A DNA stretch of 64,000 nt. Origin: Octopus sinensis. Taxonomy: Eukaryota. Where the stretch lies: contig NC_043013.1 of assembly GCF_006345805.1 (NCBI RefSeq), positions 26,102,001 through 26,166,000 on the forward strand, read 5' to 3'. Within the stretch, counting starts at the first letter, position 1; every line of letters starts with the position of its first letter. A program made the translations under genes and the position numbers. The notes beneath the pieces are model-generated. The model was not told the origin of the DNA, made no database searches, and saw nothing but the letters and a program-made list of their open reading frames with translations. Positions 7,555 to 59,442 of this stretch are shown here, one piece after another.

Positions 7555-7617
7555 TCAATGTTTTCTGTCCATGAGACTTTCTTTTAATTTTGCAAGAGTT
7601 GTATCAATATTATTTAT
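7555..7617 (-). CDS. TRPM: TRPM terminal exon INNIDTTLAKLKESLMDRKH*
   Basis: Strong tttctatactttcag acceptor; phase 0; continues the heptads; TGA at 7555-7557. Confidence 0.75.
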   Translation of the reverse strand: MNNIDTTLAKLKESLMDRKH

Positions 7618-10600
7618 CTGAAAGTATAGAAAAATCGTTTGTTATTTAGTATTTAATATATACAGGCTGTTATATTCATTTTTTATTTTATTTTATTTAC
7701 TTTCAGTTTCAAATAAATTTTCATCACAGTTATGAAATCTTGAAATATATTTGACTTTATTGTTGGGCCTTGTACTTTCTTTCAGTTTGTGTTTGGTGGT
7801 GAGGGATGCCCTAATTTTGAAGTAAATATCAAAAACAATACATTTTATCTCTTAATGTATTTGGCACATTTGGCAAGCAAAAACGGAAAGGAAGCCCATC
7901 GTATACTATATATATGTGCGTGTGTCTGTGTGTCTTTGTGTCTGTTTTGTATACTACCACCACTTCTAGACAACTGGTTTTCGTGTGTTTATGTCCTCAT
8001 AATTTAGCAGTTTGGCAAAAGAGATCAATAGTATAAGTGCCAGGCAGGGTCAAGTCATTTGACTAAAAATTATTTAAGGCAGTGCCCAAGCATGGCCACA
8101 TTCTAATGACTGAAACAAGCAAAAAAAATTAAAATTACAAATCAAATCAGCAATCAGCCTCAAATGGTAGAGTATGAGATTAAATAATTTACAATATATT
8201 AGCCTGCAAGTGAATCTCTGTGTAGTCTCTCAAGCCTCAAGATCTTGTTTTCATCTTATCCTACCATCTTAAAAAGGCAACACATTAGATAATATAGTTC
8301 TATGTATACTAAATTAGATTAAAATGTGGGATGGTCACAGTTGGATTCTTCTGATCATGGATCATAGGTGGTGATGTATCATAGCTCCAATGATATTACA
8401 ATTAGTTTTATATGTAATCACACTAATTAAATCAAATGGAGTTGTTTGCAAGTGTGCTGAACATTGATAAAATACGATATACTTACTTGGATTCTGATAA
8501 CATGAAAATTAATATAATTTCTTTCTTTTTTTAAAATGTAGAAAATTAGATTGATTAATGACTGAGAAATGAAATATAAAGTTGGTAATAGTAGTATAAA
8601 TAGAAACAAAAACTCTTTCTTTGCCATGACTATTTTTTTTCTCAATAATATCATATTAGTGTCATATATGATGATGCTGTTTGACAGATACTCATAAAGG
8701 ATGTAGCAAATATATCCCCATGAAATTTTTTACTCTTTATTTGAGATAAACCTTTTAATGTATTTGTTCTGTTTCCTATATGCTATTTCCTAATGCTACA
8801 AATGCTACACAACCATTTTCAATAAAGTCGATTTTGGCCAGAATAACTATCACATTTCTAAATGTCGTAGAAATTTTTTTTTGTCATTGCTCTATGGACC
8901 AGTCTTTTATATTTGCTTCATATCTGCAATTCTAACATTCAATAAATATTATTTGTTCAGTTAATAAATTCCTTAAAATTTTGAGTAAATCATAACATAA
9001 AATGTTAAAGCTGAAAAATAAATTTTAAATTATAAATTGCAAACCTTTTCTTCAATGTTTTGCAGCCTCTGATTTAAAATATTTGCGCTTATAGTAAATT
9101 CTTTTTCAGGTTCTGAGAATGAAATATTCTGTGAACTTTCATATTTAGGAAGTTCTAATTGGTCAATTCTGCAATGATAAAATATGTAATTATATTTAGA
9201 GGTAGTTACATTATGAAAGAGCCATTTATATCATAGTGTTCCACTATAATGGAACTTTGTCAGCTGCCAAATCACAGTTGTGTGGTGAAAATATTTACCC
9301 TTCCACTTCTTCATGCAGTGACAAGCCTATGTTTTGGGTGTCTTGAAGCTCCTCTTCAAAGCCTGTAACAATAGGGCAACATTCAACAAGGTTTGAAAAG
9401 TACCTTACTACCCATGCAAGGACTCAGAAGTCAAGAGGTGAGAGAAAAGTGTGATTGAGTGAAATCCCCAAAAATGGCACCATACAATAAGCTTTTTCCT
9501 ATCAGTAATGGTCTTTGGCTACCCCTATAATGCATTTGTTCCATGACAGATCATTATACATTTTAAAATAAAATTCAGTTTTATATCTCAAGTTTTAATT
9601 TAAATTGCTGTGCTGAGTTATCTCACCTTTTAAAGTTTCTGCTCTGAACAGAAAGTGTTTGAGTTATGAGGTGGATGAAAATTAGACATTATACAAATGC
9701 TTGACACAATGTAGACTAATGAATAAAACTCAGCTATGATCAGATTTAACATAATCTTTTAATTTAAACACCTATTATATTACATGCTACATAAACCAAA
9801 TTTTAGAAATACTTTCTTTCAGGTTTTTCTTGCAAAGTTTTGTCACTTGAGAGATTCCTTGCAATGACATTTTTTTTTTGGTGACAATATGGCAAAATAA
9901 TTTAAATACTCTTCAGTTATGGTAGAAAAATTCCTTTCTGCTTCACACCTTGTAATAGCCATTAAGTATTCCTTAAGTGCAACAATAATATTGAGGAACA
10001 CTTCAGTTAGGTGTAGATCACAAATAAGCTGAATAATTTCTGTACATTGTATTTTGATGGTGTGTTTTCTTCCGTGTTCAGAGATTTTCCAAGTTGTAAA
10101 TGGTCACCGAACTGACAGTGCACATTGAATAAATTGCAGTCAAGATCATTTTTGTAATATATTGCAAGGTTAATACTGTTCTTCTCAGAACTGTTTACCA
10201 ATTCTTAAAGGAACATGTACCTTTCCACAATCTGTTCATCTACGTTAATCCTTTAATACATTTGGATTTAACTTTCTGAATTCCACTAAAAAAAAACGCT
10301 ACCATTTGTTCCTTCTGAAAGTTTCATTTTGTAACAATGCATTTGGAAGCATCAGAATAACTTGTGGTGATATTTTATGCATCCACTATAATCAAAGCTG
10401 AAAGGAATTTTCTTTGATTTTAACAAAAATTAATACCAATAAGAAATAACAGTGAGTTCAGAAAAATTCTTAAGTTGATACTAAAAACACAAACACAACA
10501 AGAAGTAATCAGATGAATTTTCTAAACATTAAAAGCTATAAAACTATTTTTTAATGTTAATTTTGTCAATTTCTAAAGCTGAAACAAGCTAATCAAGTAA

Positions 10601-16600: not shown

Positions 16601-19600
16601 GACCACTGCATAAATGAGTAGGTTCATAAAACAATCCAGCTTCAAATTTCGTTTCTTAAAGATAAAAGCAAGAAAAGAAAGCTAAAATGGTATGGCCAGT
16701 GGTCTTGCAAAGATTACTAAATCTTCTTTTTCAAAGAACTGTGGTCTTGCAAAGATTACTAAATCTTCTTTTTCAAAGAACTGTGGTCTTGCAAAGATTA
16801 CTAAATCTTCTTTTTCAAAGAACTGTGGTCTTGCAAATTTTACTAAATCTTCTTTTTCAAAGAACTGTGGTCTTGCAAAGATTACTAAATCTTCTTTTTC
16901 AAAGAACTGTGGTCTCGCAAAGATTACTAGATCTTGTTTTTCAAAGAGCTGTGGTCTTGCAAAGATTACTAAATCTTCTTTTTCAAAGAGCTGTGGTCTT
17001 GCAAAGATTACTAAATCTTCTTTTTCAAAGAGCTGTGGTCTTGCAAAGATTACTAAATCTTCTTTTTCAAAGAACTGTGGTCTTGCAAAGATTACTAGAT
17101 CTTGTTTTTCAAAGAGCTGTGGTCTTGCAAAGATTACTAGATCTTGTTTTTCAAAGAGCTGTGGTCTTGCAAAGATTACTAGATCTTGTTTTTCAAAGAG
17201 CTGTGGTCTTGCAAAGATTACTAGATCTTGTTTTTCAAAGAGCTGTGGTCTTGCAAAGATTACTAGATCTTGTTTTTCAAAGAACAACGGTGGGAAAATT
17301 ATGTAGAAGGAATGAAAGATGTATGACTAACATGACAAAATGGATCCCAGGTCTGATACAATACCACATCAGATAGAAAAGTTTGGTGAACTGTAAGTCC
17401 TAAAGTACTCCTATGTCACCATCAGAGGTTGAGGTCTCAGGCAATCAACAGAGTGGTAGTACAAATATTATGATGTAGTTACTAGATTGTTTAGTGCTAA
17501 CAAACAGGTAAGGATGTAGTGACTGTGGAATGCACTTGAATATATAAGAGTTTATGAAACATAATGGCAACACAAAGAGTTATAGAGGCAATGCAAGGAA
17601 TGGTAATAAAGTGTAGTGGTTATGAAGAAGATTGGGCTGTTGTGGCTATGGATTATAATGGTAATACCCCCAAAATATTTTAGTGGAACCTTTGCTATGG
17701 CTAACTGATGTTGCTATGACTAACAAACAAGTTCATTGCATATACCTACGTTGTGTAGCATATTGATACAAAATATCGCTAACAGTAAAAACTGTATCCA
17801 ATAATATGCAGAAGTACAAATTTGGAAAATCACAAATAATAGAAATAAAACAAGGAAAAAGGTATTTACAAAATGCAGATTTTCTATTAGGTTGTTTACG
17901 ACTTGCTTTTTCACACAGATAGCGACAGGCCTGGTAGATGTTACAGAGCAGTATGAAAGGAGGAGGCAGAGGAGGGCGGATAGAGAACTCAAAGATTAGT
18001 TCATATCTTTGGAAGGACCAATGGAGACGACTTTTTTCCTGCACTCTTTGAAAAGTATTACTGAAAATAAAAACCAAAAAACATTACAGAACAGAATTTA
18101 TTTCCATTTTGAGCTTTCAATAATATTAAATTAAACCCTATTTTAAAAGAATCAATCAACAACAAACAAATTAAATTTATTTCTATTTAATACATATTGC
18201 ATCAATACATATAGTATCAATATTTCTATATATTTTCAGGGCCTCTGCCAGTCAACATTGAACATACATCTTCGCATGTATAACCAAATCCAGGCAAAAT
18301 ATTTTTAGGGGAGTGGACAGTTGCCCATGCATCCATACTGCTGATGTTTATTAACAGAAAAAATTGCCAAATTGGGCCAATGCAGCTTGATGTTGTTACA
18401 GGCTTTGCAGGGGGAATGCAAATACAGAACAAATACTGCAAGGTAACTTGCCTGACATTCTAAAAGCTATACAACCCTGGATAAGTACATTTTCTTTTGT
18501 GACACAGTAATGGTGAAAGGTAAAGTTGACCTGGGTGGGATCTGAACTCAAAGTGCAGAAGGTTAGAACAAATATTACGAGGTACTGTGCCCAACAATCA
18601 GGAACAGTCATTTTGGTGACAAAGAAAGATACCAGTTGTTGGAGCTCTTTAATCATGAAATAATTTAAGTTTGTGTAAGCTTCATTCATCTCAGTGAATT
18701 TTTCAACTACTTTATATAACTTGTAGAAGGATTTTCTCAGACTTTTTATTTTTTATAGCACTGGAGTACATCTTGATTCAAATGCAAAGAAAAAGCAAAA
18801 TGAGAAGACTACTTACTCTATTTTAGTTAACAGACAGATTTGGTAGTACTGTTGATGTTATTATTTGTATCAATATTTATGCTGTTGTTGAAGGAAAGTA
18901 ATTTCTTTTTTTTTAAACTCAGTCTGAATACCTGTCATTTACCAGTTATTTCTCCCATTACCAGGAACCACTTCTATTGACTTCCACCCTTCATTCTTAA
19001 AATTCTCACTCTCTCTTCACATTTTATAATGATCAGCATTTTGTGCCTCCAATTATCTCTCAATTTCTCCTGAACCATTTCCTATTGACCCACCCCATCA
19101 CCATACATCTCTTACTCTCCCCACACATTCTTGCAACCTAGCCATCATCTCCCTTTCCTTCACCATTCTCCTGTTTACAGCATTATTACTATTCTGCTGC
19201 TCTTCGTCCTTTCTCTATTGCCCGACATCACTTACCCTCCCCTATCTTCCCTCCAACTCATTTATCATCAACCACTCCTCCAACCTTGTTCACTATTCAC
19301 TTTCTTTATCCCCACCACTATCCCATCTCTCCCCATACATTCTAGTTACCTCTTCCCACCCCTCTTCCTATTCTTCTGTGCTCCCTTCTCTCTTCTCTTT
19401 ACCTTGTATCTTGATGGAACCCTGACAACTCCCCACTTCCATCTTTATCTCACTTTCCAACTCTACCCTGATTACTCTCATCCATTCTTATATAACATGA
19501 GGTAGCCTTGTATTTCCTCTGCAGCCAAACACCCATTTCTGTCCTTTCTTTCACACCTTTACCTCTCACTACCTGGCATAAAGCTGCCGCTTTTCTTTTC

Positions 19601-28648: not shown

Positions 28649-29250
28649 ATGAAATGGATAAATGAATTATCTTGTTACGGATTATTCCAAATTTAACCAA
28701 TACCTGTGTAGCAAAAATCACACCAGAAAAGACATGGTTGAGGTTACGACCATGGGGTTTCGCCCCCGTGCTTCAGCGCGGATAATTGAAGTTTTATATA
28801 TTTAGTGAAGGGAAGAAATGGAGCCGAACGAAGATTCTACAAAATTCCTTTTTATTATTTTCCACACATGTTTCAAAGACTGCAAATTCCCAAATTTGGA
28901 TTGAATAAGGAGACCATTCTCAGCTTTCTCTTCAGGAAAATCCAGGAATTTAAAATCTCAAAACAAATGCGCAGCAAGCTTTTCGAACAAAACGCTCCCT
29001 AGGAGCCCATGGTAAAAATGGCACAAAACTGTCTCTCAATATGCGCTGACGTCAGAGTGGGTGAAGGCCGACGAAAAATCCGTTGGAATAAACCTAGGTC
29101 AAACCACGGTCAAATCAGGTAGGGGAAGAATCACAGAAAACCCAAAGAGTGTGAATATATTCTGTATAACTAGTGTTAATGTTCACATTGTTTTAAGAAT
29201 GACAGCTATCTTATTTGGGTGTGAGGAACTTCTTCCCTTCACTATATATA

Positions 29251-29282
<32 letters not shown>

Positions 29283-47300: not shown

Positions 47301-50300
47301 AAATGACTTACTTTGCTCAGTGGAACACCTCTTTTTAAATGGAGCAATATTGAATTGGCTTACCAAGAAATAAACACACACAAACACATGCATTTCCGTG
47401 TTTAGAAATATTCATTAAAATTTTCACACAAATACAAGAAAAGAAATAAAATAATAAAATTAAAGATGTAGAATATTCACTGTTTTCTGGCATAGACGTA
47501 GAATTTTTCAGATCAAAATTTGCAGCCATAAAAGTTAGGTTGACCTCTACACTAAGTTGAGTTTGGAGGACCAAAAATTCCATATGAAATGCAGCAGGAT
47601 TTGAAAAGATAGTGAAGCTGTTTCAATGTTTACATGTTTAGACTATGTGCTATGCTGAGTTATTTGTCAGAAAATATAGTCAAAGAAACAATATTCTGCA
47701 CTGACACAGCAACAAGTCAAAATTTCATTAAATAGTAGCTTGTCAATTGATTCAACCCTAATATATAGATGGTACTTATGTTAGCAATCACAGAAAACAT
47801 TTGAAAATCAAAATTTTGGCCAGTGGAAAGCATAACAGTCTTGTTTCATCATTAGGTTAAAAGTGTAATACTCAGACATATGTGATGACTGGAAGAATGA
47901 TATTGTAAAGAGTTGGTGTTACAGGGAGAGTAGATGAGAGAATTAGTAGCAAGTCAGGCTACATAATGGTGATATTTAAGTGAATAAGTAGAAACTGCTA
48001 AGACTAGTGATAATCGGCATCACAAGTGGAATAAGTTAGTTTGCCAAGAGACATGGGGAGGGTCTGACATTTTCTGAAGTAGTAAACATGAAGACAGTTT
48101 TTCGAAATCAGTGACAGTAGTTACTAGAAAAACCCATAAGTATTTGCAAACAGGTCTTCCTTTTCATCGTAAACCAGTGATTACCATGTGTTGACAAGAG
48201 GCAAACACCTCAAAACTGCAGTCCATACGTATCACTTAGGCTTACGAGAGAGGGATGACCTCCCTTTGCAAATACCATAAGAGCACAGATAGTGTGCCTA
48301 AAGCCAGCTGGAGACGATGATATCCTGGGGCTAATAGCTACAGTAACACCCACCCTTAGTGGTTAGCCATATTGATGGCTAGTACACTTTACGTTGTCAA
48401 GCGGTTACTGTTTACATCTCGTTCAGAGATTTATTATTGCTAAACATTCTTAATAAGGAATTAAATGTGTTGTGTGTCCTGAAGTCAGTAACATCTATGG
48501 GAGAGGGTCAATAATTGGTATGTTAGGTCTCAAATGAAAGGATATTTGCAAGTCAGAGACAAATCAACAACAATGGATGACATGTAGTAAAAAAAATTTC
48601 AGATGTGACAAGTGGTACTATGTATGATTAATATCTTCTTGATAATCATAAAAAGAAATACAACTTACGATTTGTTGGTTTCTTTATTGTTGTCCTGCAA
48701 ATATGAATGGAGGTATAACTTACGAATATGTAATAGTTCTGTTTTATTATGTTTTGTTGTCTACATGTTAAGGTATCATCATCATCAGCATCATCATTTA
48801 GCGTCCGCTTTCCATGCTAGCATGGGTTGGACGATTCAACTGGGGTCTGGGAAGCCAGAAGGCTGCACCAGGCTCAGTCTGATCTGGCAATGTTTCTACA
48901 GCTGGATGCCCTTCCTAACGCCAACCACTCCGTGAGTGTAGTGGGTGCTTTTTACGTGCCAGACGGGGCTGGCAAACGGCCATGGTTGGATGGTGCTTTT
49001 TACGTGCCACCGGCATGGGGGCCAGGCGAGGCTGGCAACGGCCACGATCGGATGGTGCTTTTTACATACATATATATATATATATACACTCAAAAAAAAA
49101 TTTATCAATGGCCAGCATATTAAAAAATACCTTTAAAGGTTAAATTTATAAACAACTTTATAATATAAGGTATATTTACAGTTAATATTATCACAGTAAT
49201 ATCCTCAGATTTCTGGTAATGTTATATCTATAACGTGTTTAAGCTTCCATATTTAAGCTTTCATTGTAACTATAGACTTTGTATGATAAGAACTGAATTT
49301 ATTATTTTAATACTGGAACATAAAGAGAATGTTGCAAGTAAGAGGTGTCAGCCATCTCATGTGATCAAACTGAAATGCTTGACAGGAGATCCAATTTTTC
49401 CTGTCAATATATCCAATGCAGAATAATATTCTAATAGTGTTCTGGTTACAGTGACTCTCCTGCAAAAGAGTTGCATATATTGCTTCAATCAAGTCAGAAG
49501 CTAAGAAAATGGAACTTGCAACATGTTCAGATAAAATTGGTCTCTTGATAGAAACGTTTTATAACAAAAATTTGATGATTCTAATTTTAAATGTTGCAAG
49601 ACATAGTATTTTGATAAGAAAACCAATATATTTGTACTAATATGTCATCAAAGAATTTTACGACAATACTATTATGATAATATTTCTGAGATTATTAGTA
49701 ATCAGAAGCTATGACAGTAATAAAGTAACAGACATTACCTGCTTGTCCTTGTCATGAAAATGTATAAAAAATATAAACAATGGACACAATATACAGAGTA
49801 GCAACTGAAAGAAGAATAAAAATAAGAAACTGTTATTTTCATTAAAAAAAACGGAGAAATATTCAAGGATGCACTTAATATAAAAACCTGATAGTAAAGT
49901 TGGTATCAATATATAAAATAATGAAAATCAATTGAAAATTGACAGTGAACAATGCAACTTGAAATGAATATGATGTTGGCAGAATAATGTCAACTCTGGA
50001 CCTGTTGATACAATAATACCAAGTTGAGTATCATTCTTCATCTATTGCCATTATAATGACAACAGTGGATATGTCACAGTAATACCATAATGAGATCCTC
50101 TCTACTGCATTATGTGGTCTTCTCATTAAAATAGGGAATTTTCAAGAAGCATTCTTAGAAAGATCTCTCTTGATACATTTATTTGGTTTGTGTTTGCTTA
50201 TGGAATTAACAATAGATATCAGGTATCCATTGGTCTCAAGAACCTTTAGGAACTGAGCAACATGTGCAACCTGGCTGCTGTTGTCACTGTATCTTTGGTG

Positions 50301-53300
50301 TATCCATGCAATCTCATTATGTAAATAGCTCATCTTAGCCCTGATGTGGAAAGCTGACCTGTAATGGATGAAGAGGTCCTGGCAAGTTGATTTGTGGTAG
50401 AACACCATGTCAATTTTTCTCCATTATCTGTGACATTTAACTGAATGTCTAGCTAAGAGGGAGAACCATCGCTGTTTGAGTCTCCAATGGTGAAGCTAAT
50501 GAGTTGGTCCACCTTACTGAGATTCTTTAGCATTGTGGAAGTGTCCTCGTGGAATGAAGTGAGCATGAGGATCTCATACATATGAATGGTGTAAAAGGCA
50601 TATGAGTGGCAGATACTGAGTACCCTACACTCCAGTTGGTTTAAGTAAGTAATAGCAACCAGGCCTGAGATGTTCAGCCCCTATAGACAGGACTGAACAC
50701 TATATGTGTTTCCAAGGAAATCACAATGTGTGTTGGTGACAACAACTGACAGTATCTGGTAGACGTTGGCTGAAATAAATCTGAAACATATAAGGAGGTG
50801 ACACATTTCATGATCAGTTCAACCATGGTAAGGGCAGGAACAAAGAAGTGTAGTGAGACCATGTTTAAGCTGAAGGTATATCTGTTATATCTGAAGGTAT
50901 CAGAGATGGCCAGTGGCTCCAATAAAAGCATCATATGTCACCAACACCATCTTCTACCATCACCATGTGAAAAGACATCAAAACGACCAACGGTTGGAGA
51001 GTTGCTGCTAATCCTAATGCTGGGCAGTTTAAATAAAATAACAAAATTGATGTAACTAGACATTTTAAATTGTTTCCTTCTGAGGATGGGCCTTTGCACC
51101 TAAAATGTAAAAGTTTTTTGTAACACTTTCTGCCTTGTTAGAAGCTTTCTTTATTTTCCTTTTCTGCTTCTGTACTGCCATGCTTTAAGTGAGCTGCAAC
51201 ACTCATATATGTAATTGTAATTCATTGTCTAGTGTCAAAGGTAGTAACTTTTTTTTGGTTTACTCACAAGTATCCTCCTTCATTAAATTTAAACTTAAGA
51301 TTAAAATTATAATAATTATGGAAATCTCATCACACAAACAGAAGTAGGAAATACTTTTGTATGTTAAGGGAGAAAGGAGTACAGTCAAGTCTGATGAAAA
51401 TGAATTCAACCAACTTGCTTGCTTTTGAGTAATTTTGAATCTATTGGTAACATAAAATAGCTGTATTCTACACCTTTAATTGTGTGTGTGTGTGTATGCA
51501 AGCATGCATTTATATGTGCATTAATGCATTAACCGTATTCTACACTTGTAAACATATATAAATTAATTACATATTCATTATGATGAGTGCTCCATATTCA
51601 TTCAACAGATATGTAGATAATTAAAGAGAAACAAAAAGAGCATAATTAATTTAATTAACCATCAATGAATTGCTAGTTATTATTTCAATGGGTTGAAGAT
51701 TGGCAATAATAACTTTGATAGCATCTGACATCAGCTAAATAAAGTAAACTATATTATAGATGTACTTATCATATTGCATATGTAAACTATATAATAAAGA
51801 AAAAATAATGTATATATAATATGTGTATACATGTATCATGTGTCCTACATGATACATGTAAACAATATAATATACAGATTTGAATATTTTTAAAGAGTGT
51901 GATACATGTAATCATGTAATCTGTGCATGTGTAGAATATACATGTGTAAAATATGATGCATGTAAGTTAGATAATACATGACCCAAATAAGACATGTAAG
52001 TTTTATATGAGAATTTAAGTTCTCTACCTTCAAAATGTTGGTCTTTTTACAAATTTTTCCCCTCCAAATTTTTCCCAACAAAGATTGACAAGCAGCCTGG
52101 GACACAAATTTCTTATTGTTAATATTAAATGCTATTTGCATGCATGAAGCATCATTCCAAGTTTTCCGTCGTAGCAGCAGTAAATCTAATGTCCGTTTTT
52201 CATCCGCGTAGTAACATTCAGTCAAAATTCCAATGGCACGTTCTTCATAAAGACTAAAATTAACAGAAAAATCAGTATTTATAAAAGTTCCAAATCAAAT
52301 GAAAGAGAGAATATTTACATATTTATAATCAACCAACAATAACTTCAATATTGATTGGAGAAAAACTCTTGTGCATACTAAGTTGCCACTGTGATTCTCA
52401 GTTTTTATTTAGCATATAGACATTTTTAACAATGTCAGCATCAACAATTATCCACCTATCCATACATATTTTTATATATATACTCACTCAGCATGTTCCT
52501 GTAGTTGGATCCTTCTGTCATAATCTTTACACTTTGTTTTCAGGAATTCGAGCACATTATTTGCAATTAGAGCAGATGGTAAAGCGCCCTAGTAAAATGA
52601 CAATTGTATCAAAATACTAAATGTGAACACATTTAATCACAATATGCATAAGACAAATGAGAATTAAGTAATATCCAGCTGGAAAGGATGCTAGCGTTTC
52701 TTTCAGGTAACTGAATGTTTGCTTCTTTTACTAAACAGTTAGGTGAAGAGAGCCATACAAAATGAACTATCTTCCTCTGAGATTTAATGACAAGAATATA
52801 TTTTAATTAATTGAATCTATCAATTGAACAACTTGGTTAAAGTTAATTGTTATCAATATTCTCATTAGGTACCTTGCTAATTATTCTATATTAATTGACT
52901 GAATCCATTTGCATTATTTTCAATCTATTTCTAATGCTAGTACCATATTTCCTAAGCTAGTAGTCTTTACAGAGAGATTATAATAATAATGAAATTATTG
53001 TATACAGTGCTCAGGTGCACCACAACTTGTCAGAAAGTGCGTATAAAGTATATGCAGTAATGTACAAATGTCTGGAAAGTGAACAATGTATGAGTCAGAT
53101 ACATGCTTGTGTGTGTATGGAGGGGAGAAAATCAGGTGTAGTGTTGGCGAATCTCAGAAAGCATGGATGTTTTGAAGAATGCAGTGCTCCGATAACTAAC
53201 AACTGATGCCAACAGTTTGTTCCATGCTTCAGCAACTCTCAGTGTGAAAAAATGTTTCCTAAAGTCATGGGAGCTATGCTGTTTTCTGACTTTGTAAATA

Positions 53301-56300: not shown

Positions 56301-57397
56301 AAAGTTTGAGTTGAAGAACCAATATGGTTGACTGGTTAAGTGACTATACATGTCCTCTGAAAAAACTTGCCTTGTATCTAGACAAATGAGTCATTTATGT
56401 GGCTCTTACAACAAACCAACTTACCATGCCTTCTTTCCAAAATAGAAAAGCCATTTCTTTTCTGTTTAAATATAATGCCCATAAGAACAATTTTATTGCA
56501 ATGTAAAAGCTATCTGAAATAAGAAGCAGACAAATAAAAAAATGTGATACAATTAATTCAAATATTAGGAATGAAAAGAAAACAGAAAACTGAAGGAAAT
56601 TATTACAGATTTTATCAGACCATCTATTTTCTAAATTTGACTATTTTCTGGACTCCTTAGAAGCAAAACAAAAAGAAAATATGAAAAAAATTAACTTCAG
56701 AAATATTTAACTTAAATATTATGACATTATTCTACAACTTCTGCTAAATCAATGCATTAATATTGATCTCAAATTTTAGCACAAGGCCAGAAATTTAAGG
56801 AAAAGGTAAGGTCAACTTCAGCAGATTTTGAACACAGAGTATTAAGATGGCCAAAATGCATTCTGTCCAGCATGTTAATGATTTACCACCTTATTATCAA
56901 TAATAATAATAATAATAATAATCCTTTCTACTAAAGGGTAGGGGGATAGTTAATTGCATCAAACACCAGTACTCAACTGGTATTTTTTTAATCAACCCTG
57001 AAAGGATGAAAGGCAAAGCCAACCTCAACGGAATTTGAGCTCAGAAAATAAGGATGGATGAAATACTGCTAAACATTTTGCCTGGTGTGCTGACAGTCCT
57101 ACCAGCTCATTGCCTTAATAATAACAATAATAATAATAGTAATAATGGTTTCACATTTTGCCACAAGGGCAGCAATTTGGATGGAGAGGACAAGTCGATT
57201 ACAGTGACCCCAGTGTTCAGCTGGTACTTTTATTTTATCAACACCAAAAAGATGGAAGGCAAAGTTGACCTCTGTAGAATCTGAACTCAGAATGGAGGGA
57301 CGGGTGAAATGCCTCAAAGCATTTCATCTAATGTGCTAACAATTCTGCCAGCTCGCCACCTTTATACTTACTACAACTACTACTACTACTACTACTA

Positions 57398-57429
<32 letters not shown>

Positions 57430-59442
57430 CCTTTCTACTAAAAGTATAAAGCCTGGGAGGGGACTAGTCGATTACATCAACCCAAGTGTTTCACTGGTAC
57501 TTCATTTATCAAACTCAAAAGGATGAAAAGCAAAGTCGACCTCAGTGTAATTTGAACTCAGAACATAAGGATAGACGAAATGCCACTAAGCATTTTGCCC
57601 AGCATGCAAACGTTTCAACCAGCTTACTGGCTTAATAATAATAATAAGAAAGATCCCTGGCTTACCATCCATGCAAGAAGTGCAAAAGATTGTTTTCATT
57701 AAGCATCACACTGAGAAGAGCATTGTTGCTGTGAATTTTCTTTGCTTTCTTTTCTTCCTTTTCTCTCTTCCTTTCTATTTTTCTTTTCTTTCTTTCTTCC
57801 TTTTTTTTTCTATAACATATCTTGACTTGGTAAATGAACAATCTGGTAAGTTTACTTTAATACCCTACCAATGTATGTAGTAAGTTTCCCTGTCCTGTGT
57901 CAGGAAGACACTAAGCAAGAATCATCATCATCGTTTAACGTCCGTTTTCCATGCTAGCATGGGTTGGACAGTTCAATCAGTGTCTGGGAAGCCAGGAGGC
58001 TGTGCCAGGCTCCAGTCTGTTCTGGCATTGTTTCTACAGCTGGATGTCCTTCCTAACGCCAACCACACCGTGAGTGTAGTGGGTACTTTTTACGTGCCAC
58101 CGGCACAGGGGCCAGAGGAGGCTGGCAAACAGCCATGATCGGTTGGTGCATTTTACGTGTCACTGACATGGATGGAAGTCAGACAGTGCTGACATCAGCC
58201 ATGTTTGGATGGTGCTTTTTACATGCCACCGGCACGGGTATCACAACTACAATTTCCATTTGATTTTTATTTTGATGTTGATGTACTTGACTCAATAGGT
58301 CTCCTCAAGCAAAGTGGGTCACCCTACGATCCAAGGTTTTAGCACAGCAGGCCGTCCTGTGAGCCATGGACTCACTTCATTTGTCGGGTCTTCACAGTCA
58401 CACCATATCTCAGAGGTCTCAGTCTTTCGTCATTGCCTCTGTGAGGCCCAACGTCACACTGGTATGAGTATCACAACTACAATATCCATTTATACTTGAC
58501 TCAATAGGTCTCCTCAAGCACGGTAGGTCGCCCTACAATCCAAGGTTAGCACAGCAGGCCGTCCTGTGAGCTATGAACTCACTTCATTTGTCGGGTCTTC
58601 GCAGTCACAGCATATCTCCAGAGGTCTTGGTCTTTCGTCATAGCCTCAGTGAGGCCGAACGTTCAAAGGTCATGCTTGACCACCTCATCCAATGTCTTCT
58701 TGGGTCTACCTCTACCCCGAATTCCTTCAACAGTTTGGGAATGGCACTTCTTCACACATCTCTCCTCATCCATCCGTAGTACATGACCATGCCAATGCAA
58801 ACGTCTCTCCTGCATGCTACATCCAATGCTTCTTATGTCCAACATTTCTCTCAGGGTGCTTACACTCTGTCGTGCATGCACACTGACATTACACATCCAG
58901 CAGATCATGCTAGCTTCATTTCTTTCAAGCCTACACATGTCCTCCGCAGTCACTGCCCATGTTTCACTGCTGTGAAGCATGGCAGTTTGCACACATGCGT
59001 CATACAATCTACCTTTCACTCTGAGTGAGAGACCCTTTGTCGCCAGTAGGGGAAGGAGCTTTCTAAACTTTGCCCAGGCTATTCTTATTCTAGTGGTAAC
59101 ACTCTCTGAGCATCCACCCCCACTAATAACTTCGTCACCTAGGTAGCAGAAACTATCAACTACTTCTAGTTTCTCCCCCTGGAGTGCAATGGAATCTGTT
59201 TTCTGAGTATCTGTGGTGTCTATTGCCCCTGTGCATCTGCCACACATGAAAGCTATCTTCTTGGTATCTCAGAGTATGATCTGATGGATGTGTAATGTTA
59301 ATTTTCCTTTGTGTACAAAATTGAAAGAAGGAAAATAATAACAATAATAATAATGACCTGTTATCCTTTCCACAAAATATCCCTCATTCATGAGTTTATT
59401 GAGTAAAGAATGTCCATTTTCAATGCTAATATCTTTATTTTG
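7555..59442 (-). CDS. TRPM: TRPM-family (melastatin) cation channel, 3' ~60% of the gene: 15 exons, 619 aa visible, N-terminus outside window
   Basis: Exons joined by hand: 59358-59442, 56425-56513, 52488-52588, 52028-52253, 49739-49804, 48669-48694, 43690-43783, 41890-42018, 33477-33722, 27465-27639, 21475-21601, 17870-18060, 14717-14834, 9045-9168, 7555-7617. All GT-AG, phases chain without frameshift, sum 1860 nt. TRPM motifs: LFLWALYLNRKEMA, YEERAIGILTECY, FYNAP, EEIHQ, WNVVD, LGPKL, YGELF, NLLIAMF, WSFQRY, RPPLPPPF. Paralog identity not determined. Confidence 0.95.
7900..8125 (+). mobile_element. SINE family A, 3' half, decayed
   Basis: Homologous to 31540-31700 and, inverted, to 38840-39060. 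Confidence 0.55.
9045..9168 (-). CDS. TRPM: TRPM penultimate exon (IDQLELPK...LNQRLQNIEEK), coiled coil
   Basis: cattgcag / AAG|gtttgc; 124 nt; open frame; phase 2 to 0; heptad pattern. Confidence 0.8.
9790..10200 (-). mobile_element. hAT transposase C-terminal (dimerisation) relic
   Basis: LTEVFLNIIVALKEYL..TRCEAERNFS matches the hAT 'FPN...AL...LT......AER.FS' motif. Confidence 0.6.
11490..11800 (+). mobile_element. tRNA-derived SINE (family E)
   Basis: Decayed tRNA-like head with B box gtttgaatc; body cctgcgatgg...cccatccagg; (AAC)n tail. Confidence 0.6.
11880..12385 (+). mobile_element. RTE LINE 3' fragment
   Basis: VVDSFHSLGDQVSS...ARMRIAWEKFRELLP, same family as 39240-41175. Confidence 0.8.
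13089..13304. mobile_element. Tc1/mariner-type MITE
   Basis: TA|caaggggtgctgaaaaggtcctg ... caggaactttacagcagcccctca|TA; degenerate ~25-bp TIRs. Confidence 0.7.
14717..14834 (-). CDS. TRPM: TRPM exon rib helix (KTYKTDLEKEKEKDLILWEDQMVDSYIARQ)
   Basis: tttcacag / TT|gtaagt; 118 nt; resembles the TRPM 'L..(F/W)E.....Y' helix; phase fits. Confidence 0.88.
15400..17460 (+). mobile_element. old RTE-clade LINE relic hosting the minisatellite
   Basis: Broken frames resembling GNIPAELLK, TTEQIF, VGVHQ..LLSFT.., KLKWYG and QRT.VGK...KW. Confidence 0.7.
16699..17286. repeat. minisatellite, 14 x 42 bp (GTGGTCTTGCAAAGATTACTAAATCTTCTTTTTCAAAGAACT and variants)
   Basis: 14 contiguous units counted; no spacers. 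Confidence 0.98.
17870..18060 (-). CDS. TRPM: TRPM exon TRP helix/box (WSFQRYELIFEF..RPPLPPPF)
   Basis: tttcag / T|gtaaat; 191 nt. Confidence 0.97.
19790..20230 (-). mobile_element. decayed non-LTR relic, possibly R4/Dong-like
   Basis: FHINSDIDSFYLKCK*GGNGL resembles 'DRLYLPRKEGGRGL'. Confidence 0.4.
20375..20443. repeat. (TG)26(CG)5 alternating purine-pyrimidine tract
   Basis: Direct reading. Confidence 0.95.
21475..21601 (-). CDS. TRPM: TRPM exon outer pore loop and S6 (ENCDASNSTCP...TNILLLNLLIAMF)
   Basis: tttcag / AG|gtaag; 127 nt; not in the ORF track, found by phase matching. Confidence 0.97.
21825..22365 (-). mobile_element. composite/nested SINE: family C tail 21825-22015 plus family B body and head 22030-22365
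   Basis: Homology to 4660-4850 and to 34650-34975. Confidence 0.75.
22650..23605 (+). mobile_element. four head-to-tail copies of tRNA-derived SINE family D separated by (ATT)n/(ACT)n
   Basis: Repeated ctggcagaatcgttagca...gagttcaaattcc...gccttgtg...agtagaaagga units at about 22650, 22905, 23113 and 23378. Confidence 0.85.
23650..26370 (+). mobile_element. Tx1/L1-clade LINE, 5'-truncated ORF2 (RT + C-terminal Zn finger), young
   Basis: 648-aa ORF (SPGLDGLPYE, DQSKAFDRV, RQRCPLS, YADD, GGLG). One TGA at 25612, then the same frame continues through CPRC..HALVQC to 26088. 3' UTR with AATAAA and (ATT)n tail. Confidence 0.95.
26380..26585 (+). mobile_element. SINE family D copy
   Basis: Homology to 22650-22866. 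Confidence 0.8.
26970..27335 (-). mobile_element. RTE LINE 3'-UTR-only insertion; similar copies at 28230-28410 (-), 31960-32302 (+), 48775-49065 (-)
   Basis: (CAT)n-cgtttaacgtccg..catgctagcatgggttgg, the same terminus as the longer RTE copies. Confidence 0.8.
27465..27639 (-). CDS. TRPM: TRPM exon S5, pore helix and filter (YGELFLDEY)
   Basis: tttcag / G|gtaaac; 175 nt. Confidence 0.97.
28602..29920. repeat. 637-bp direct tandem duplication bounded by (TA)n tracts
   Basis: 28644-29242 is repeated at 29281-29879; no difference noticed. Confidence 0.95.
28805..29242. mobile_element. 438-bp MITE with 13-bp TIR GTGAAGGGAAGAA flanked by TA; second copy at 29442-29879
   Basis: TIRs at 28805-28817 and 29230-29242. 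Confidence 0.65.
29925..31420 (-). mobile_element. RTE LINE 3' portion (RT, PHD-like insert, 3' UTR)
   Basis: GYPWELLYADDLAL, WPCSICRKGVGRNSIRCTQC, GRGRPKKTLDEVVKHDL. Confidence 0.9.
31420..31700 (+). mobile_element. SINE family A (CORE-like ggcaccttgg.caa motif) abutting the RTE copy
   Basis: Homologous (inverted) to 41325-41480 and 38840-39060. Confidence 0.65.
33477..33722 (-). CDS. TRPM: TRPM exon S3-S4 and S4-S5 linker
   Basis: tttcag / ATG|gtgagt; 246 nt; DIWNVVD, IRFLY, LGPKLIMIKKM. Confidence 0.97.
33808..34192 (+). mobile_element. SINE family D, long-tail copy followed by a second partial copy
   Basis: Well-preserved head with B box gagttcaaattcc; tail 33989-34040 resembles the Tx1 LINE 3' end. 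Confidence 0.85.
34650..34975 (-). mobile_element. tRNA-derived SINE family B, well preserved
   Basis: A box tggcttagtgg, B box gttcgattccc, then gtccttgagcaagacact; no tRNA acceptor stem. Confidence 0.88.
35070..35087 (-). CDS. candidate 18-nt cassette microexon IFKREM in the S2-S3 linker
   Basis: CTGAC branch-like motif, tttattctttcag acceptor, ATG|gtaagtatt donor; phase 0-0 fits the flanking exons; not needed for the frame; no transcript evidence. Confidence 0.5.
35259..35349. repeat. inverted repeat: 39-bp arms, 13-nt loop
   Basis: 35259-35297 pairs with 35311-35349; the single mismatch is G.U on the minus strand. Confidence 0.95.
35460..36200 (-). mobile_element. probable Penelope pseudo-LTR remnants carrying hammerhead-type motifs
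   Basis: Motifs at 35560-35597 and 36084-36152; 35890-35960 recurs at 49090-49150. Assignment to PLE is inferred from the known PLE-hammerhead association. Confidence 0.45.
36084..36152 (-). ncRNA. type I hammerhead ribozyme motif with intact core
   Basis: UUAUCA-CUGAAGA-GGUGAAAAUUC(UUAU)GAAUUAACCCC-GAAA-UUGGGACCAA-UA/UGGUAA; stems I-III can all be drawn; AUA cleavage triplet. Confidence 0.7.
36240..37590 (+). mobile_element. RTE LINE 3' end with pyrimidine-rich 3' UTR and (GAT)n tail
   Basis: LHWFGQVMHMN...QEDMG*S homology to the other RTE copies; tail at 37572-37588. Confidence 0.65.
37661..37804. repeat. degenerate fold-back element with two opposed hammerhead-like relics
   Basis: tattattaaagctgcaaaatattca versus tgaatattttgtagttttaataata; CTGACAA..GAAAC at 37743-37764. 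Confidence 0.55.
38840..39060 (-). mobile_element. SINE family A 3' half; the matching 5' half lies at 41325-41480
   Basis: Two halves of one family in the same orientation either side of the RTE insertion; they may be a single split copy. Confidence 0.6.
39240..41175 (+). mobile_element. RTE LINE 3' portion with 282-aa ORF (RT end, PHD finger, thumb) and modular 3' UTR
   Basis: ORF 39590-40438; DMEKASDRV and upstream YADD-region relics; (GAT)n tail. Confidence 0.92.
41325..41480 (-). mobile_element. SINE family A head
   Basis: tRNA-like ggtaagtagcttgc..ggttcagtccc followed by ggcaccttgggca. Confidence 0.75.
41890..42018 (-). CDS. TRPM: TRPM exon S1-S2 IFYIIFLGLYSYVLL...FTEEIHQ
   Basis: tttcag / CAG|gtaaat; 129 nt; two TM helices; EExxQ motif. 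Confidence 0.97.
42985..43200 (-). mobile_element. SINE family D copy
   Basis: Inverted homology to 22650-22866. Confidence 0.7.
43690..43783 (-). CDS. TRPM: TRPM exon (pre-S1 / start of S1) CCCKPCGRCCRMFCRCASFYNAPIIKFLSNL
   Basis: atctag / TTG|gtatgt; 94 nt; FYNAP motif; in-frame alternative acceptor possible at 43738. Confidence 0.9.
43841..46960. repeat. 1558-bp direct tandem duplication bounded by (TG)n tracts
   Basis: 43855-45390 is repeated at 45413-46948; ORF translations identical in both copies. Confidence 0.95.
43990..44880 (-). mobile_element. RTE-BovB-like LINE relic (duplicated at 45548-46438)
   Basis: FPVTHSVKQGYVLTPALL; VYIHTRVDMVLLELSRLRS (cf. 'YRTDGKLFNLRRL'); KRYGCPDIF. 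Confidence 0.65.
48669..48694 (-). CDS. TRPM: TRPM 26-nt microexon DNNKETNK(S)
   Basis: tatttgcag / TC|gtaagt; the only candidate I found that converts phase 0 (49739) to phase 2 (43783). Confidence 0.8.
49739..49804 (-). CDS. TRPM: TRPM exon (pre-S1 elbow) LLLCILCPLFIFFIHFHDKDKQ
   Basis: tttcag / CAG|gtaatg; 66 nt; phase 0-0. Confidence 0.9.
50050..51060 (-). mobile_element. decayed Penelope-like RT relic
   Basis: LISFTIG...LDIQ...VFYHKST.QDLFIHYRSA..FLKVLETNGY. Confidence 0.6.
52028..52253 (-). CDS. TRPM: TRPM exon (MHR4) LYEERAIGILTECY...QSLLGKIWRGKICKKTNILK
   Basis: attttag / AAG|gtagag; 226 nt; strong similarity to TRPM2-type 'AIGVFTECY..DE.RA..LL....W...C..A......F....Q..L..W.G'. Confidence 0.97.
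52488..52588 (-). CDS. TRPM: TRPM exon (MHR4) GALPSALIANNVLEFLKTKCKDYDRRIQLQEHA
   Basis: ttttactag / GA|gtgagt; 101 nt; phase 0 to 2; resembles the TRPM 'AAAL.A..L' helix. Confidence 0.92.
52980..55520 (-). mobile_element. CR1-clade LINE, 5'-truncated, frameshifted (APE end, RT, 3' UTR, (ATT)n tail)
   Basis: TLDLLL..LGDSDH; SPGLDG; LDFAKAFNSVPH; SGVPQGSVLGPLLF; YADDIK; VRPHLEFASPVWNP; TRGH..K; FFTLRVAEAWNKL. Confidence 0.95.
56425..56513 (-). CDS. TRPM: TRPM exon (MHR4) DSFYIAIKLFLWALYLNRKEMAFLFWKEGM
   Basis: tttcag / ATG|gtaagt; 89 nt; matches the TRPM LFLWA..NR..MA..FW motif. Confidence 0.95.
56780..57650 (-). mobile_element. train of about four SINE family D copies separated by (AAT)n/(ACT)n
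   Basis: Inverted homology to the 22650-23605 train. Confidence 0.8.
57920..59270 (-). mobile_element. RTE LINE 3' portion with a duplicated ~220-bp 3' segment
   Basis: ORF 58663-59247; 58237-58457 resembles 58465-58660. Confidence 0.9.
59358..59442 (-). CDS. TRPM: TRPM exon (MHR3/4 linker) QNKDISIENGHSLLNKLMNEGYFVERIT
   Basis: Long pyrimidine tract + cag acceptor; CAG|gtcatt donor (weaker); 85 nt; ends phase 1, matching the next exon. Confidence 0.8.

What the first reader, a model, noticed from the sequence alone, without database searches (positions are those of the whole stretch)
7555..59442. Tail-less invertebrate TRPM: Ca2+ site and YGE filter kept, no NUDT9-H or kinase
The reconstructed protein stops about 60 aa into the terminal coiled coil (...SLMDRKH*). 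It keeps the voltage-sensor-like-domain Ca2+ ligands of TRPM2/4/5/8: S2 EEIHQ, S3 WNVVD and TRP-helix LIFEF (equivalent to human TRPM2 E843/Q846/N869/D872/E1073). It also has the acidic YGELFLDEYEE filter seen in Ca2+-permeable invertebrate TRPM2 and in TRPM1/3/6/7. This combination suggests a Ca2+-modulated, Ca2+-permeable channel lacking the C-terminal enzyme domain. It could be an independent NUDT9-H loss parallel to TRPM8, or a member of the sister TRPS family. A sensory role is speculation.
Basis: partly seen in the sequence, partly recalled or inferred. Interest (0 to 1): 0.7.

Follow-up and report, generated by a model that had tools for sequence, protein, structure and literature searches.

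The report
Octopus tail-less TRPM2-like channel gene
The window holds the 3' half of an already annotated octopus TRPM2-like ion-channel gene that really does end after its coiled coil, because octopus copies of this channel lost the ADP-ribose-hydrolase tail; this is a small evolutionary footnote, not a new kind of channel.

Summary
Sixteen minus-strand exons (59442 to 7555, all AG/GT, phase-consistent) encode 625 aa running from MHR4 to a stop codon.

This is only the C-terminal half of the gene. The model is 623/625 identical to residues 652-1276 of the Octopus vulgaris RefSeq protein "TRPM member-like 2", whose gene spans 104 kb. Its O. bimaculoides ortholog, XP_014774531, is listed as TRPM-beta in a 2026 phylogeny.

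The missing tail is genuine:
- The acceptor, reading frame, TGA and a downstream AATAAA are conserved between species.
- In O. bimaculoides an unrelated MOSC gene starts 4.9 kb downstream.
- Mollusc NUDT9-H probes find nothing in the window or in that locus.
- All octopus paralogs, and transcript assemblies of relatives, stop at the same place.

My tree nests this NUDT9-H-less clade (100%) inside a lophotrochozoan TRPM-beta clade (99%) that includes NUDT9-H-bearing members. That supports an independent loss and refutes the TRPS reading.

The predicted function is a Ca2+-co-activated, Ca2+-permeable, non-inactivating channel. It may still be nucleotide-gated through a largely intact MHR1/2 pocket. 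Interest is low to moderate.

The parts
59358..59442 (-). Exon 1 in the window (P0301 residues ~652-680; MHR3/4 linker, QNKDISIENGH...). Starts at an acceptor in phase 0, not at a start codon.
56425..56513 (-). Exon (MHR4: ...AIKLFLWALYLNRKEMAFLFWKEGM)
52488..52588 (-). Exon (MHR4)
52028..52253 (-). Exon (end of MHR4, PF25508 positions 206-257; ...SQAACQSLLGKIWRGKI...)
49739..49804 (-). Exon (pre-S1 hydrophobic helix LLLCILCPLFIFFIHFHDKDKQ); donor CAG|GTAATG
48669..48694 (-). 26-nt micro-exon (DNNKETNK+S), with splice sites conserved in O. bimaculoides
43690..43783 (-). Exon with the cysteine cluster CCCKPCGRCCRMFCRC and the start of pre-S1/S1 (FYNAPIIKFLSNL)
41890..42018 (-). Exon with S1 and S2, carrying Ca2+ ligands E and Q (FTEEIHQ)
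35070..35087 (-). 18-nt micro-exon (IFKREM) in the S2-S3 linker
33477..33722 (-). Exon with S3 (WNVVD: Ca2+ ligands N and D), S4 and the S4-S5 linker
27465..27639 (-). Exon with S5, pore helix, selectivity filter and post-filter (YGELFLDEYE)
21475..21601 (-). Exon with the pore-loop cysteine pair (C-DASNST-C) and S6 (LLNLLIAMF)
17870..18060 (-). Exon with the TRP helix (WSFQRYELIFEF, RPPLPPPFILL) and the post-TRP segment
14717..14834 (-). Exon with the rib helix (…KDLILWEDQMVDSYIARQ…)
9045..9168 (-). Exon with the linker and first half of the C-terminal coiled coil (…ISANILNQRLQNIEEK)
7555..7617 (-). Terminal coding exon (INNIDTTLAKLKESLMDRKH) plus TGA at 7557-7555. Acceptor, frame and stop are conserved in O. 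bimaculoides.
7202..7207 (-). AATAAA 348 nt after the stop, conserved in O. bimaculoides. Likely poly(A) signal.
7236..7461 (-). Insertion of about 225 bp in the 3' UTR relative to O. bimaculoides (repeat-like). It carries two further poly(A)-like hexamers.

Best explanation
Identity. The window contains the last 16 coding exons (residues 652-1276) and the 3' UTR of an octopus TRPM-beta ('TRPM2-like') channel gene. It is the gene annotated in O. vulgaris as 'TRPM member-like 2', and it is the ortholog of O. bimaculoides XP_014774531.

Shown:
- The protein ends right after a C-terminal coiled coil, and no NUDT9-H or kinase follows.
- This tail-less state is shared by all octopus paralogs found (at least four groups, two of them tandem neighbours in O. 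bimaculoides) and by two transcript-derived relatives.
- This clade sits inside the NUDT9-H-bearing lophotrochozoan TRPM-beta clade. The ADP-ribose-hydrolase tail was therefore lost in this lineage, independently of the losses in TRPM8 and TRPM4/5, and the gene family then expanded.

Inferred from sequence:
- The subunits tetramerise through the coiled coil.
- Intracellular Ca2+ binds the intact S2/S3/TRP site (E-Q-N-D-E) as a co-activator.
- The nvTRPM2-type filter (G-E-L) and acidic post-filter (L-D-E) give a Ca2+-permeable, non-inactivating pore.
- In Nematostella TRPM2, gating runs through the N-terminal MHR1/2 pocket and not through NUDT9-H. That pocket is largely kept here (T-L-F-R-T-R versus T-T-Y-R-T-R). 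The channel may therefore still be opened by ADP-ribose or a related nucleotide, while lacking the built-in ligand-clearing enzyme.
For: Gene model: 16 AG/GT exons, open and phase-consistent. The model is 623/625 identical to P0301 residues 652-1276.

Family: PDB best hit is nvTRPM2 at 8e-68. Pfam gives PF25508 and Ion_trans and no NUDIX.

The C-terminus is real:
- Acceptor, frame, TGA and AATAAA are conserved against O. bimaculoides.
- The heptad register is continuous across the last splice.
- In O. bimaculoides a MOSC gene starts 4.9 kb downstream, and the window is collinear with that locus.
- Seven NUDT9-H tails from molluscs and other animals give only noise (E >= 0.6) against the whole window and against L001. 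They match each other at 1e-31 to 1e-98.
- PDB probes of the 9.4-1.7 kb stretch find nothing.
- Octopus paralogs end 119-171 aa after the TRP box.
- P0155 is a complete 1166-aa ORF with a 3' UTR of about 0.9 kb on the longest of RNA-seq contigs from several runs.

Clade:
- XP_014774531 is listed as TRPM-beta.
- NJ tree: cephalopod clade 100%, lophotrochozoan beta clade 99% with 10 NUDT9-H+ members.
- None of 15 octopus hits carries PF25969, and there is no cephalopod among the best 120 NUDT9-H+ hits.

Function: residue table, with roles of the residues taken from PMC8145809.

Constraint: the ORF is intact although dS = 0.11. Under neutrality P(no stop) is about 0.0004.
Against: - There is no transcript or expression evidence for this particular gene in this species. 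The RefSeq models are predictions.
- dN/dS against O. bimaculoides is 0.63. Constraint is relaxed outside the TM core, and some paralogs may be drifting.
- One ADPR-pocket position is non-conservative (nv T179 -> L, the residue that TRPM4/5 have) and Tyr is Phe, so nucleotide gating is uncertain.
- My trees are quick NJ trees. Nodes between the mollusc and lophotrochozoan levels have 40-54% support.
- The two collection searches list only the best 120 hits. A divergent NUDT9-H+ cephalopod gene could have been missed.
- MHR1/2/3 were examined only in database proteins, not in the window.
Confidence: 0.85

Rival explanations
1. The gene is not tail-less. The exon at 7617-7555 would be an alternative or mis-called terminal exon, and the main transcript would splice on to NUDT9-H exons beyond the window edge.
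For: Only 7.5 kb of window lies downstream, which is about one intron length in this gene. In O. bimaculoides a GTAAGA donor-like site lies 12 nt before the stop.
Against: - The window has no such donor (ATGGACAGA).
- The stop and a downstream AATAAA are conserved.
- No NUDT9-H signal appears in the window or in 10 kb downstream in O. bimaculoides, where an unrelated MOSC gene starts at +4.9 kb.
- RefSeq models in two species, all paralogs and transcript contigs of relatives end after the coiled coil.
- No octopus TRPM-beta-type protein carries PF25969.
Confidence: 0.03
2. It is a TRPS (soromelastatin, ced-11-like) channel rather than a TRPM.
For: Octopus TRPS genes have been mis-annotated as 'TRPM-like 2' or 'TRPM2' in NCBI. 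That is the same name this gene bears.
Against: - TRPS keeps Nudix and has a divergent TRP box 2 and inter-box segment. This protein has WSFQRY...RPPLPPPFILL and no Nudix.
- TRPS is only about 18% identical to TRPMs. The O. bimaculoides ortholog of this protein is 41-42% identical to mollusc TRPM-beta.
- Its ortholog is listed as TRPM-beta, and octopus TRPS is XP_052825070/XP_029638531.
Confidence: 0.01
3. The absence of NUDT9-H is ancestral rather than an independent loss. The octopus clade would then belong to an anciently tail-less lineage (TRPM-beta-like, gamma or bilaterian alpha).
For: - Those clades lack NUDT9-H and occur in molluscs.
- Nodes inside the lophotrochozoan clade are weak in my NJ tree (40-54%).
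- In a first small tree the clade paired with a tail-less annelid protein at 55%.
Against: - The lophotrochozoan clade that contains the octopus genes and 10 NUDT9-H+ genes has 99% support. The tail-less Owenia protein pairs with the NUDT9-H+ Owenia protein.
- The best non-cephalopod hits of the ortholog are NUDT9-H+ chiton and bivalve genes at 41-42% identity, against 33-35% for tail-less amphioxus, hemichordate and annelid genes.
- The published ML and Bayesian trees put the ortholog in beta.
- The Ca2+ site typical of TRPM2/4/5/8 is complete.
Confidence: 0.07
4. The gene is a decaying or functionless duplicate within a lineage-specific expansion.
For: dN/dS is 0.63 overall and at or above 1 in some peripheral exons (X0, X4a). 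The gene is one of several paralogs. Its introns are swollen with transposable elements.
Against: - All 16 exons are open with canonical splice sites in two species at dS 0.11. About 10 stops would be expected under neutrality, giving P about 0.0004.
- The TM-core exons X5 and X7 have dN/dS of about 0.25-0.3.
- All Ca2+-site, filter, TRP and S6 signatures are intact.
- The 18- and 26-nt micro-exons are conserved.
Confidence: 0.06

Closest known systems
Octopus vulgaris RefSeq protein 'TRPM member-like 2' (P0301, 1276 aa) and its O. bimaculoides ortholog XP_014774531.2 (P0001)
   Same: The window model is 623/625 identical to P0301 residues 652-1276, with the same exon structure (including both micro-exons) and the same C-terminus. 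It is 84.8% identical to P0001, and the genomic DNA is collinear.
   Different: Two substitutions (R/K and L/I), so the window is another individual, another assembly or a sibling species. The window lacks the 5' half of the gene.
Nematostella vectensis TRPM2 (nvTRPM2, PDB 6co7), the model invertebrate TRPM-beta 'chanzyme'
   Same: Best solved relative. It has an identical Ca2+ site (E893/Q896/N918/D921/E1110) and an identical YGELFLDE filter and post-filter. Four of the six MHR1/2 ADPR-pocket residues are identical and one more is conservative (Tyr to Phe).
   Different: nvTRPM2 carries a catalytically active NUDT9-H ADPRase tail, which this protein lacks entirely. Pocket residue T179 is Leu here and Y264 is Phe.
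Vertebrate TRPM8, TRPM4 and TRPM5 (tail-less TRPM-beta members)
   Same: Same architecture: the protein ends shortly after the C-terminal coiled coil, has the same Ca2+ site, and lost NUDT9-H secondarily.
   Different: The losses are independent, since the octopus clade is lophotrochozoan-specific. TRPM4/5 have a Gln filter (FGQ/YGQ) and are monovalent-selective, and their MHR1/2 pocket is degenerate (VLRRMG/VLGRTG), unlike here.
Other lineage-specific tail-less TRPM-beta duplicates (oysters, Mya, planorbid snails, Owenia, hemichordates, echinoderms)
   Same: Each nests beside NUDT9-H-bearing genes of its own phylum and has no NUDT9-H match by BLAST.
   Different: In those taxa a NUDT9-H-bearing copy persists alongside the tail-less one. 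In octopus none was found.
TRPS (soromelastatin; C. elegans ced-11, octopus XP_052825070)
   Same: SLOG-linked six-TM channel, sister family to TRPM. Octopus members share the NCBI name 'TRPM-like 2'.
   Different: TRPS retains a (non-catalytic) Nudix domain and has a divergent TRP box 2. This protein has neither feature.

Membership tests
TRPM (melastatin) channels | N-terminal SLOG/MHR1-2 domain (Pfam LSDAT_euk) | tested here: met
   Not in the window. Present in the full-length O. vulgaris model, which is identical to the window model over 623/625 C-terminal residues, and in the O. bimaculoides ortholog (PF18139, E 8e-67).
TRPM (melastatin) channels | MHR3/4 'TRPM2-like domain' (PF25508) | tested here: met
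   Window model hits PF25508 positions 148-257 of 257 at E 1e-28. The first 147 positions are encoded upstream of the window.
TRPM (melastatin) channels | Six-TM ion-transport domain with the TRPM pore and S6 signature | tested here: met
   Ion_trans at E 4e-21. Aligns S1 to S6 to about 100 solved TRPM chains, best 8e-68. S6 reads LLNLLIAMF.
TRPM (melastatin) channels | TRP domain with box 1 (WKFQR-like) and box 2 (PPPF) | tested here: met
   WSFQRYELIFEFSIRPPLPPPFILL, aligned to TRPM2/4/5 TRP helices.
TRPM (melastatin) channels | C-terminal tetramerising coiled coil | tested here: met
   A single heptad register with 8/12 I/L/V/M core positions (10/12 counting A and F) spans the last splice. 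There is a sub-threshold coiled-coil Pfam hit at residues 580-605.
TRPM-beta clade (TRPM2/4/5/8 and invertebrate TRPM2-like) | Phylogenetic placement within the beta clade | tested here: met
   NJ tree: inside the 99%-supported lophotrochozoan clade of NUDT9-H+ TRPM2-like genes, with vertebrate TRPM2/4/5 in the same ingroup. The ortholog is listed as TRPM-beta by Morini et al. 2026. No labelled beta-like or gamma references were available.
TRPM-beta clade (TRPM2/4/5/8 and invertebrate TRPM2-like) | VSLD/TRP Ca2+ site (E, Q in S2; N, D in S3; E in TRP helix) | tested here: met
   E-Q-N-D-E at the columns of nv E893/Q896/N918/D921/E1110.
TRPM2-type chanzyme (ADPR-gated channel with ADPRase tail) | C-terminal NUDT9-H (Nudix) domain | tested here: not met
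   Stop codon 145 aa after the TRP box. No NUDIX in Pfam. No PDB hit downstream. tblastn with seven NUDT9-H tails gives only noise across the window and the orthologous locus.
TRPM2-type chanzyme (ADPR-gated channel with ADPRase tail) | N-terminal MHR1/2 ADPR pocket (nv T143, T179, Y264, R271, T307, R329) | tested here: inconclusive
   T-L-F-R-T-R in the O. vulgaris protein. Both arginines and two threonines are kept, Tyr is Phe (as in chiton and Lingula NUDT9-H+ genes), and T179 is Leu (as in TRPM4/5). Binding was not testable.
TRPS (soromelastatin) | Divergent TRP box 2 and inter-box segment; retained Nudix domain; clusters with ced-11 | tested here: not met
   Canonical TRPM TRP domain and no Nudix. 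Octopus TRPS is a different accession. No TRPS sequence was available for my own tree.
TRPM6/7 channel-kinases | C-terminal alpha-kinase domain | tested here: not met
   No alpha-kinase match in Pfam or against PDB for the downstream 7.7 kb. The protein ends after the coiled coil.
TRPM8-like cold/menthol sensors | Cold and cooling-agent activation | not testable with these tools
   Needs electrophysiology. TRPM8 arose within vertebrates, so any similarity would be convergent.

The most novel reading that the evidence does not exclude
Octopods, and possibly all coleoid cephalopods, may have no NUDT9-H-bearing TRPM-beta gene at all. Under this reading the ancestral ADPR-hydrolysing 'chanzyme' lost its enzyme tail once on the cephalopod stem. 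It then expanded into at least four paralogs, partly in tandem, that evolve under relaxed constraint. The paralogs keep the Ca2+ site, a Ca2+-permeable non-inactivating pore and most of the MHR1/2 nucleotide pocket. That would make them nucleotide- and Ca2+-gated channels without self-limiting ligand clearance, or channels re-tuned to new ligands. This is not described in the 2026 TRPM evolution paper, which states that non-vertebrate TRPM-beta retains NUDT9-H.
Probability: 0.35. Interest if true: 0.5.

Novelty: already known. Interest (0 to 1): 0.25.

Why it matters
The gene itself is ordinary and already catalogued: it is in RefSeq, and its ortholog sits in a published TRPM phylogeny.

What is mildly useful is the evolutionary detail. 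Published summaries say invertebrate TRPM-beta channels keep the NUDT9-H ADPRase tail. Every octopus TRPM-beta-type protein I could retrieve lacks it, while chiton, gastropod and bivalve relatives keep it.

If that holds, cephalopods offer a natural 'tail deletion' of the invertebrate chanzyme. It could be used to test two ideas:
- that NUDT9-H serves only to clear the ligand;
- that MHR1/2 is the conserved gating site.

It would also add one more independent case to the recurrent loss of this domain.

Tried and rejected
1. A word-indexed homology search with four concatenated exons returned nothing, so I mapped exons differently. I built pseudo-proteins from all minus-strand stop-free segments and ran them against Pfam and PDB.
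I kept to its rule and submitted one contiguous exon translation instead. This found the orthologs.
3. My first junction choices were wrong in three places: the 43738 acceptor, the 17900 donor and a direct 49734-to-43783 junction. Ortholog comparison corrected them and revealed two micro-exons.
4. A strict Nudix-box regular expression found nothing, even in NUDT9-H-bearing relatives. I replaced it with BLAST against a Lingula NUDT9-H tail.
5. I considered that the exon before 59442 had been deleted in this genome. A TE copy at 60544-60873 matches L001 at 87.6%. However, its flanks do not align, and the O. vulgaris protein contains that exon, so it most likely lies beyond position 64000.
6. Rfam at gathering thresholds found no RNA family in the window, so there is no intronic miRNA like mir-204/211 of TRPM1/3.
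7. The O. vulgaris locus DNA could not be fetched because the gene range exceeds 100 kb.

Full report
WHAT IS IN THE WINDOW

The window is AT-rich eukaryotic DNA, about 30-45% G+C, full of microsatellites and retroelement ORFs. On the minus strand, stop-free stretches carry unmistakable TRPM peptides.

I first mapped exons by aligning frame-agnostic pseudo-proteins to Pfam and PDB. I then resolved the splice junctions by phase. Finally I checked the model against orthologs.

The final model has 16 exons, all with AG/GT borders and consistent phases. It runs from an acceptor at 59442 to the TGA at 7557-7555. The model encodes 625 residues.

Every quoted motif is present: FTEEIHQ (S2), WNVVD (S3), WSFQRYELIFEF (TRP helix) and ...SLMDRKH* at the end. 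YGELFLDEYE|E is also there, with its last Glu formed across the splice.

The similarity is far beyond chance. PDB gives E 8e-68 to Nematostella TRPM2 and about 100 further TRPM chains. Pfam gives PF25508 at 1e-28 and Ion_trans at 4e-21.

IT IS HALF OF AN ANNOTATED GENE

The model starts at an acceptor inside MHR3/4 (PF25508 position 148 onward). No SLOG/MHR1-2 exon exists in the window.

An exhaustive search with one exon found XP_014774531.2 of O. bimaculoides, named 'TRPM member-like 2'. A second search found the O. vulgaris RefSeq protein of the same name. Its residues 652-1276 differ from my model at only two positions. It confirms both micro-exons, of 26 nt and 18 nt, and the C-terminus.

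The O. vulgaris gene spans 104 kb, so the window carries its 3' half. The window is collinear with the O. bimaculoides locus at 85-92% nucleotide identity, introns included. The donor is therefore O. vulgaris or a very close relative.

IS THE PROTEIN REALLY TAIL-LESS?

Yes. The evidence is as follows.
- The terminal exon's acceptor, reading frame and TGA are conserved between the two species, as is an AATAAA downstream (window 7207-7202).
- The coiled-coil heptad register runs unbroken across the last splice. The protein ends four residues after the last core position.
- In O. bimaculoides an unrelated same-strand MOSC gene starts 4.9 kb after the stop.
- tblastn with seven NUDT9-H tails from molluscs and other animals gives only noise (E >= 0.6) against both strands of the whole window and against the O. 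bimaculoides locus plus 10 kb downstream. The tails match one another at 1e-31 to 1e-98.
- PDB, which holds TRPM2, NUDT9 and TRPM7, gives nothing for the downstream 7.7 kb.
- All octopus paralogs stop 119-171 residues after the TRP box.
- A member of the same clade (P0155) is a complete 1166-aa ORF with 5' and 3' UTRs on RNA-seq contigs from several runs.

WHICH CLADE, AND WAS THE LOSS INDEPENDENT?

Morini et al. 2026 (PMC13143021) list XP_014774531 as TRPM-beta. They list a different octopus gene as TRPS. They state that NUDT9-H is retained in TRPS, in cnidarian alpha, in non-vertebrate beta and in gnathostome TRPM2.

My NJ tree uses 53 sequences, 1078 columns and 100 bootstraps. It gives a 100%-supported cephalopod clade with no NUDT9-H: four octopus paralog groups plus two transcript-derived relatives. 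This clade is nested in a 99%-supported lophotrochozoan clade. That larger clade holds ten NUDT9-H-bearing genes from a chiton, gastropods, bivalves, a brachiopod, a nemertean and an annelid.

The database searches agree. The best non-cephalopod hits of the ortholog are NUDT9-H-bearing mollusc genes at 41-42% identity. None of 15 octopus hits carries the NUDT9-H Pfam family. No cephalopod appears among the best 120 hits to a NUDT9-H-bearing TRPM-beta profile.

The TRPS alternative fails for three reasons: TRPS keeps Nudix, it has a divergent TRP box 2, and it is only about 18% identical to TRPMs.

Many other phyla show similar lineage-specific tail-less duplicates. The phenomenon is therefore recurrent.

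HOW IT PROBABLY WORKS (INFERENCE)

I aligned the O. vulgaris protein with the 6CO7 sequence; the numbering was verified at 14 positions.
- It has the full Ca2+ site, E-Q-N-D-E.
- It has the nvTRPM2-type filter and post-filter, YGELFLDE.

According to PMC8145809, these residues bind the co-activating Ca2+. The filter Glu was reported to be needed for Ca2+ permeation in other TRPM channels, and the LDE post-filter triplet prevents pore rundown.

The same review reports that deleting NUDT9-H leaves nvTRPM2 gating intact. ADPR acts through the MHR1/2 pocket instead.

That pocket reads T-L-F-R-T-R here. For comparison:
- nvTRPM2: T-T-Y-R-T-R.
- Chiton: T-T-F-R-T-R.
- Lingula: T-M-F-R-T-R.
- TRPM4: V-L-R-R-M-G.
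- TRPM5: V-L-G-R-T-G.

Nucleotide gating is therefore plausible but unproven. What is certainly missing is the ADPRase that would clear the ligand.

CONSTRAINT

Against O. bimaculoides, dN = 0.070 and dS = 0.111, so dN/dS = 0.63. The ratio is about 0.25-0.3 in the S1-S2 and pore exons. This is relaxed for an ion channel.

However, an open 1.8-kb CDS would survive neutral divergence of this size with P of about 0.0004. Splice sites and micro-exons are also conserved. The gene is maintained, probably as one member of an expanding family. Two paralogs are tandem neighbours in O. bimaculoides, and others lie elsewhere on the same chromosome.

NOVELTY AND LIMITS

The gene is annotated and already placed in a published tree, so I rate it 'already known'.

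I could not find any paper that describes the loss of NUDT9-H from cephalopod TRPM-beta. The cephalopod TRP survey counts only one beta TRPM per species. That gap is the only mildly new point.

The limits are these:
- There is no transcript evidence for this gene itself.
- My trees are NJ trees without labelled beta-like, gamma or TRPS references.
- The collection searches list only the top 120 hits.
- The N-terminal half was examined only in database proteins.
- The exon preceding 59442 is not in the window. It is present in the O. vulgaris protein, so it most likely lies beyond position 64000.

Noticed in passing
window 59443-64000: The exon encoding the 45 residues before the first window exon (TGTLNNFML...SLFRM in the O. 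vulgaris protein) is absent from the window. A TE copy at 60544-60873 matches the O. bimaculoides intron at 87.6%, but its flanks do not align. The exon probably lies beyond the window edge rather than being deleted.
   Followed up: partly
window 43690-43783 (minus): A dense cysteine cluster, CCCKPCGRCCRMFCRC, lies just before S1. It is conserved in the O. bimaculoides ortholog (CCCKSCGECCSMFYRC) and looks like a possible palmitoylation or metal site. In the window the upstream CAG acceptor used in O. bimaculoides is mutated (CAT). The acceptor therefore shifts by 6 nt, and two residues (SR) are dropped in frame.
   Followed up: partly
window 35070-35087 and 48669-48694 (minus): Two micro-exons, of 18 nt and 26 nt, have perfect splice sites conserved across species. 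The 18-nt exon (IFKREM) sits immediately after the S2 Ca2+ ligands.
   Followed up: yes
window ~43800-46900: A tandem duplication of about 1.56 kb lies in the intron upstream of the Cys-cluster exon. Identical ORFs occur at 44084-44335 and 45642-45893, and at 44606-44854 and 46164-46412. O. bimaculoides has a single copy.
   Followed up: partly
window 28805-29958: A tandem duplication of about 637 bp. Identical 65-aa ORFs lie at 28805-29002 and 29442-29639, in the intron between the S3-S4 and pore exons.
   Followed up: no
window 16699-17285: A minisatellite of 42-bp units, 14 copies at 97% identity, in the intron between the TRP and rib-helix exons. It is open in several frames on both strands, which produces spurious ORFs of over 200 aa.
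   Followed up: partly
window 23668-25614 (+): An uninterrupted 648-aa reverse-transcriptase ORF (RVT_1, E 8.5e-22) sits in a G+C-rich island (54% against about 35% around it). It is antisense to the channel gene, in the pore-S6 intron, and may be a young LINE-like element.
   Followed up: partly
window 53517-54885 (-), 61388-62407 (-), 39590-40438 (+): Further mobile-element remains are present: a split RVT_1 ORF, a Tc1/mariner-like DDE_3 plus HTH transposase, and a PHD-finger ORF. The PHD-finger ORF belongs to a repeat family with copies at 30411-30680, 58663-59247 and 60563-60796. The same 16 exons span 52 kb here against 21 kb in O. bimaculoides.
   Followed up: partly
window 7236-7461 (minus): An insertion of about 225 bp lies in the 3' UTR relative to O. 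bimaculoides. It brings extra poly(A)-like hexamers (7383, 7257) ahead of the conserved AATAAA at 7207.
   Followed up: partly
L001 44500-44522 (O. bimaculoides): In O. bimaculoides the terminal exon reads ...CATGGTAAGAAAACATTGA. This creates a consensus-like GTAAGA donor 12 nt before the stop. The window reads ATGGACAGA and has no such site.
   Followed up: no
L001/L002 (O. bimaculoides CM046617.1, 8.02-8.14 Mb): Two tail-less TRPM-beta paralogs, XP_014781149 and XP_014774531, are head-to-tail neighbours about 27 kb apart, with a small 169-aa gene between them and a MOSC gene after them. A third, partial paralog (XP_014773772, named 'TRPM4') lies at 30.3 Mb on the same chromosome.
   Followed up: partly
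proteins P0304, P0307, P0309, P0310, P0313, P0327: Octopus species encode several large proteins (860-1423 aa) that are about 50% identical to the SLOG/MHR1-2 part of this channel. Their Pfam lists show only the SLOG families and no channel domain. They may be SLOG-only derivatives of the same expansion, or fragmentary gene models.
   Followed up: no
window 63213-63800: A long (AC)n microsatellite of about 590 bp, about 297 copies, produces the Cys/Val-rich pseudo-ORFs at the window's right end.
   Followed up: yes
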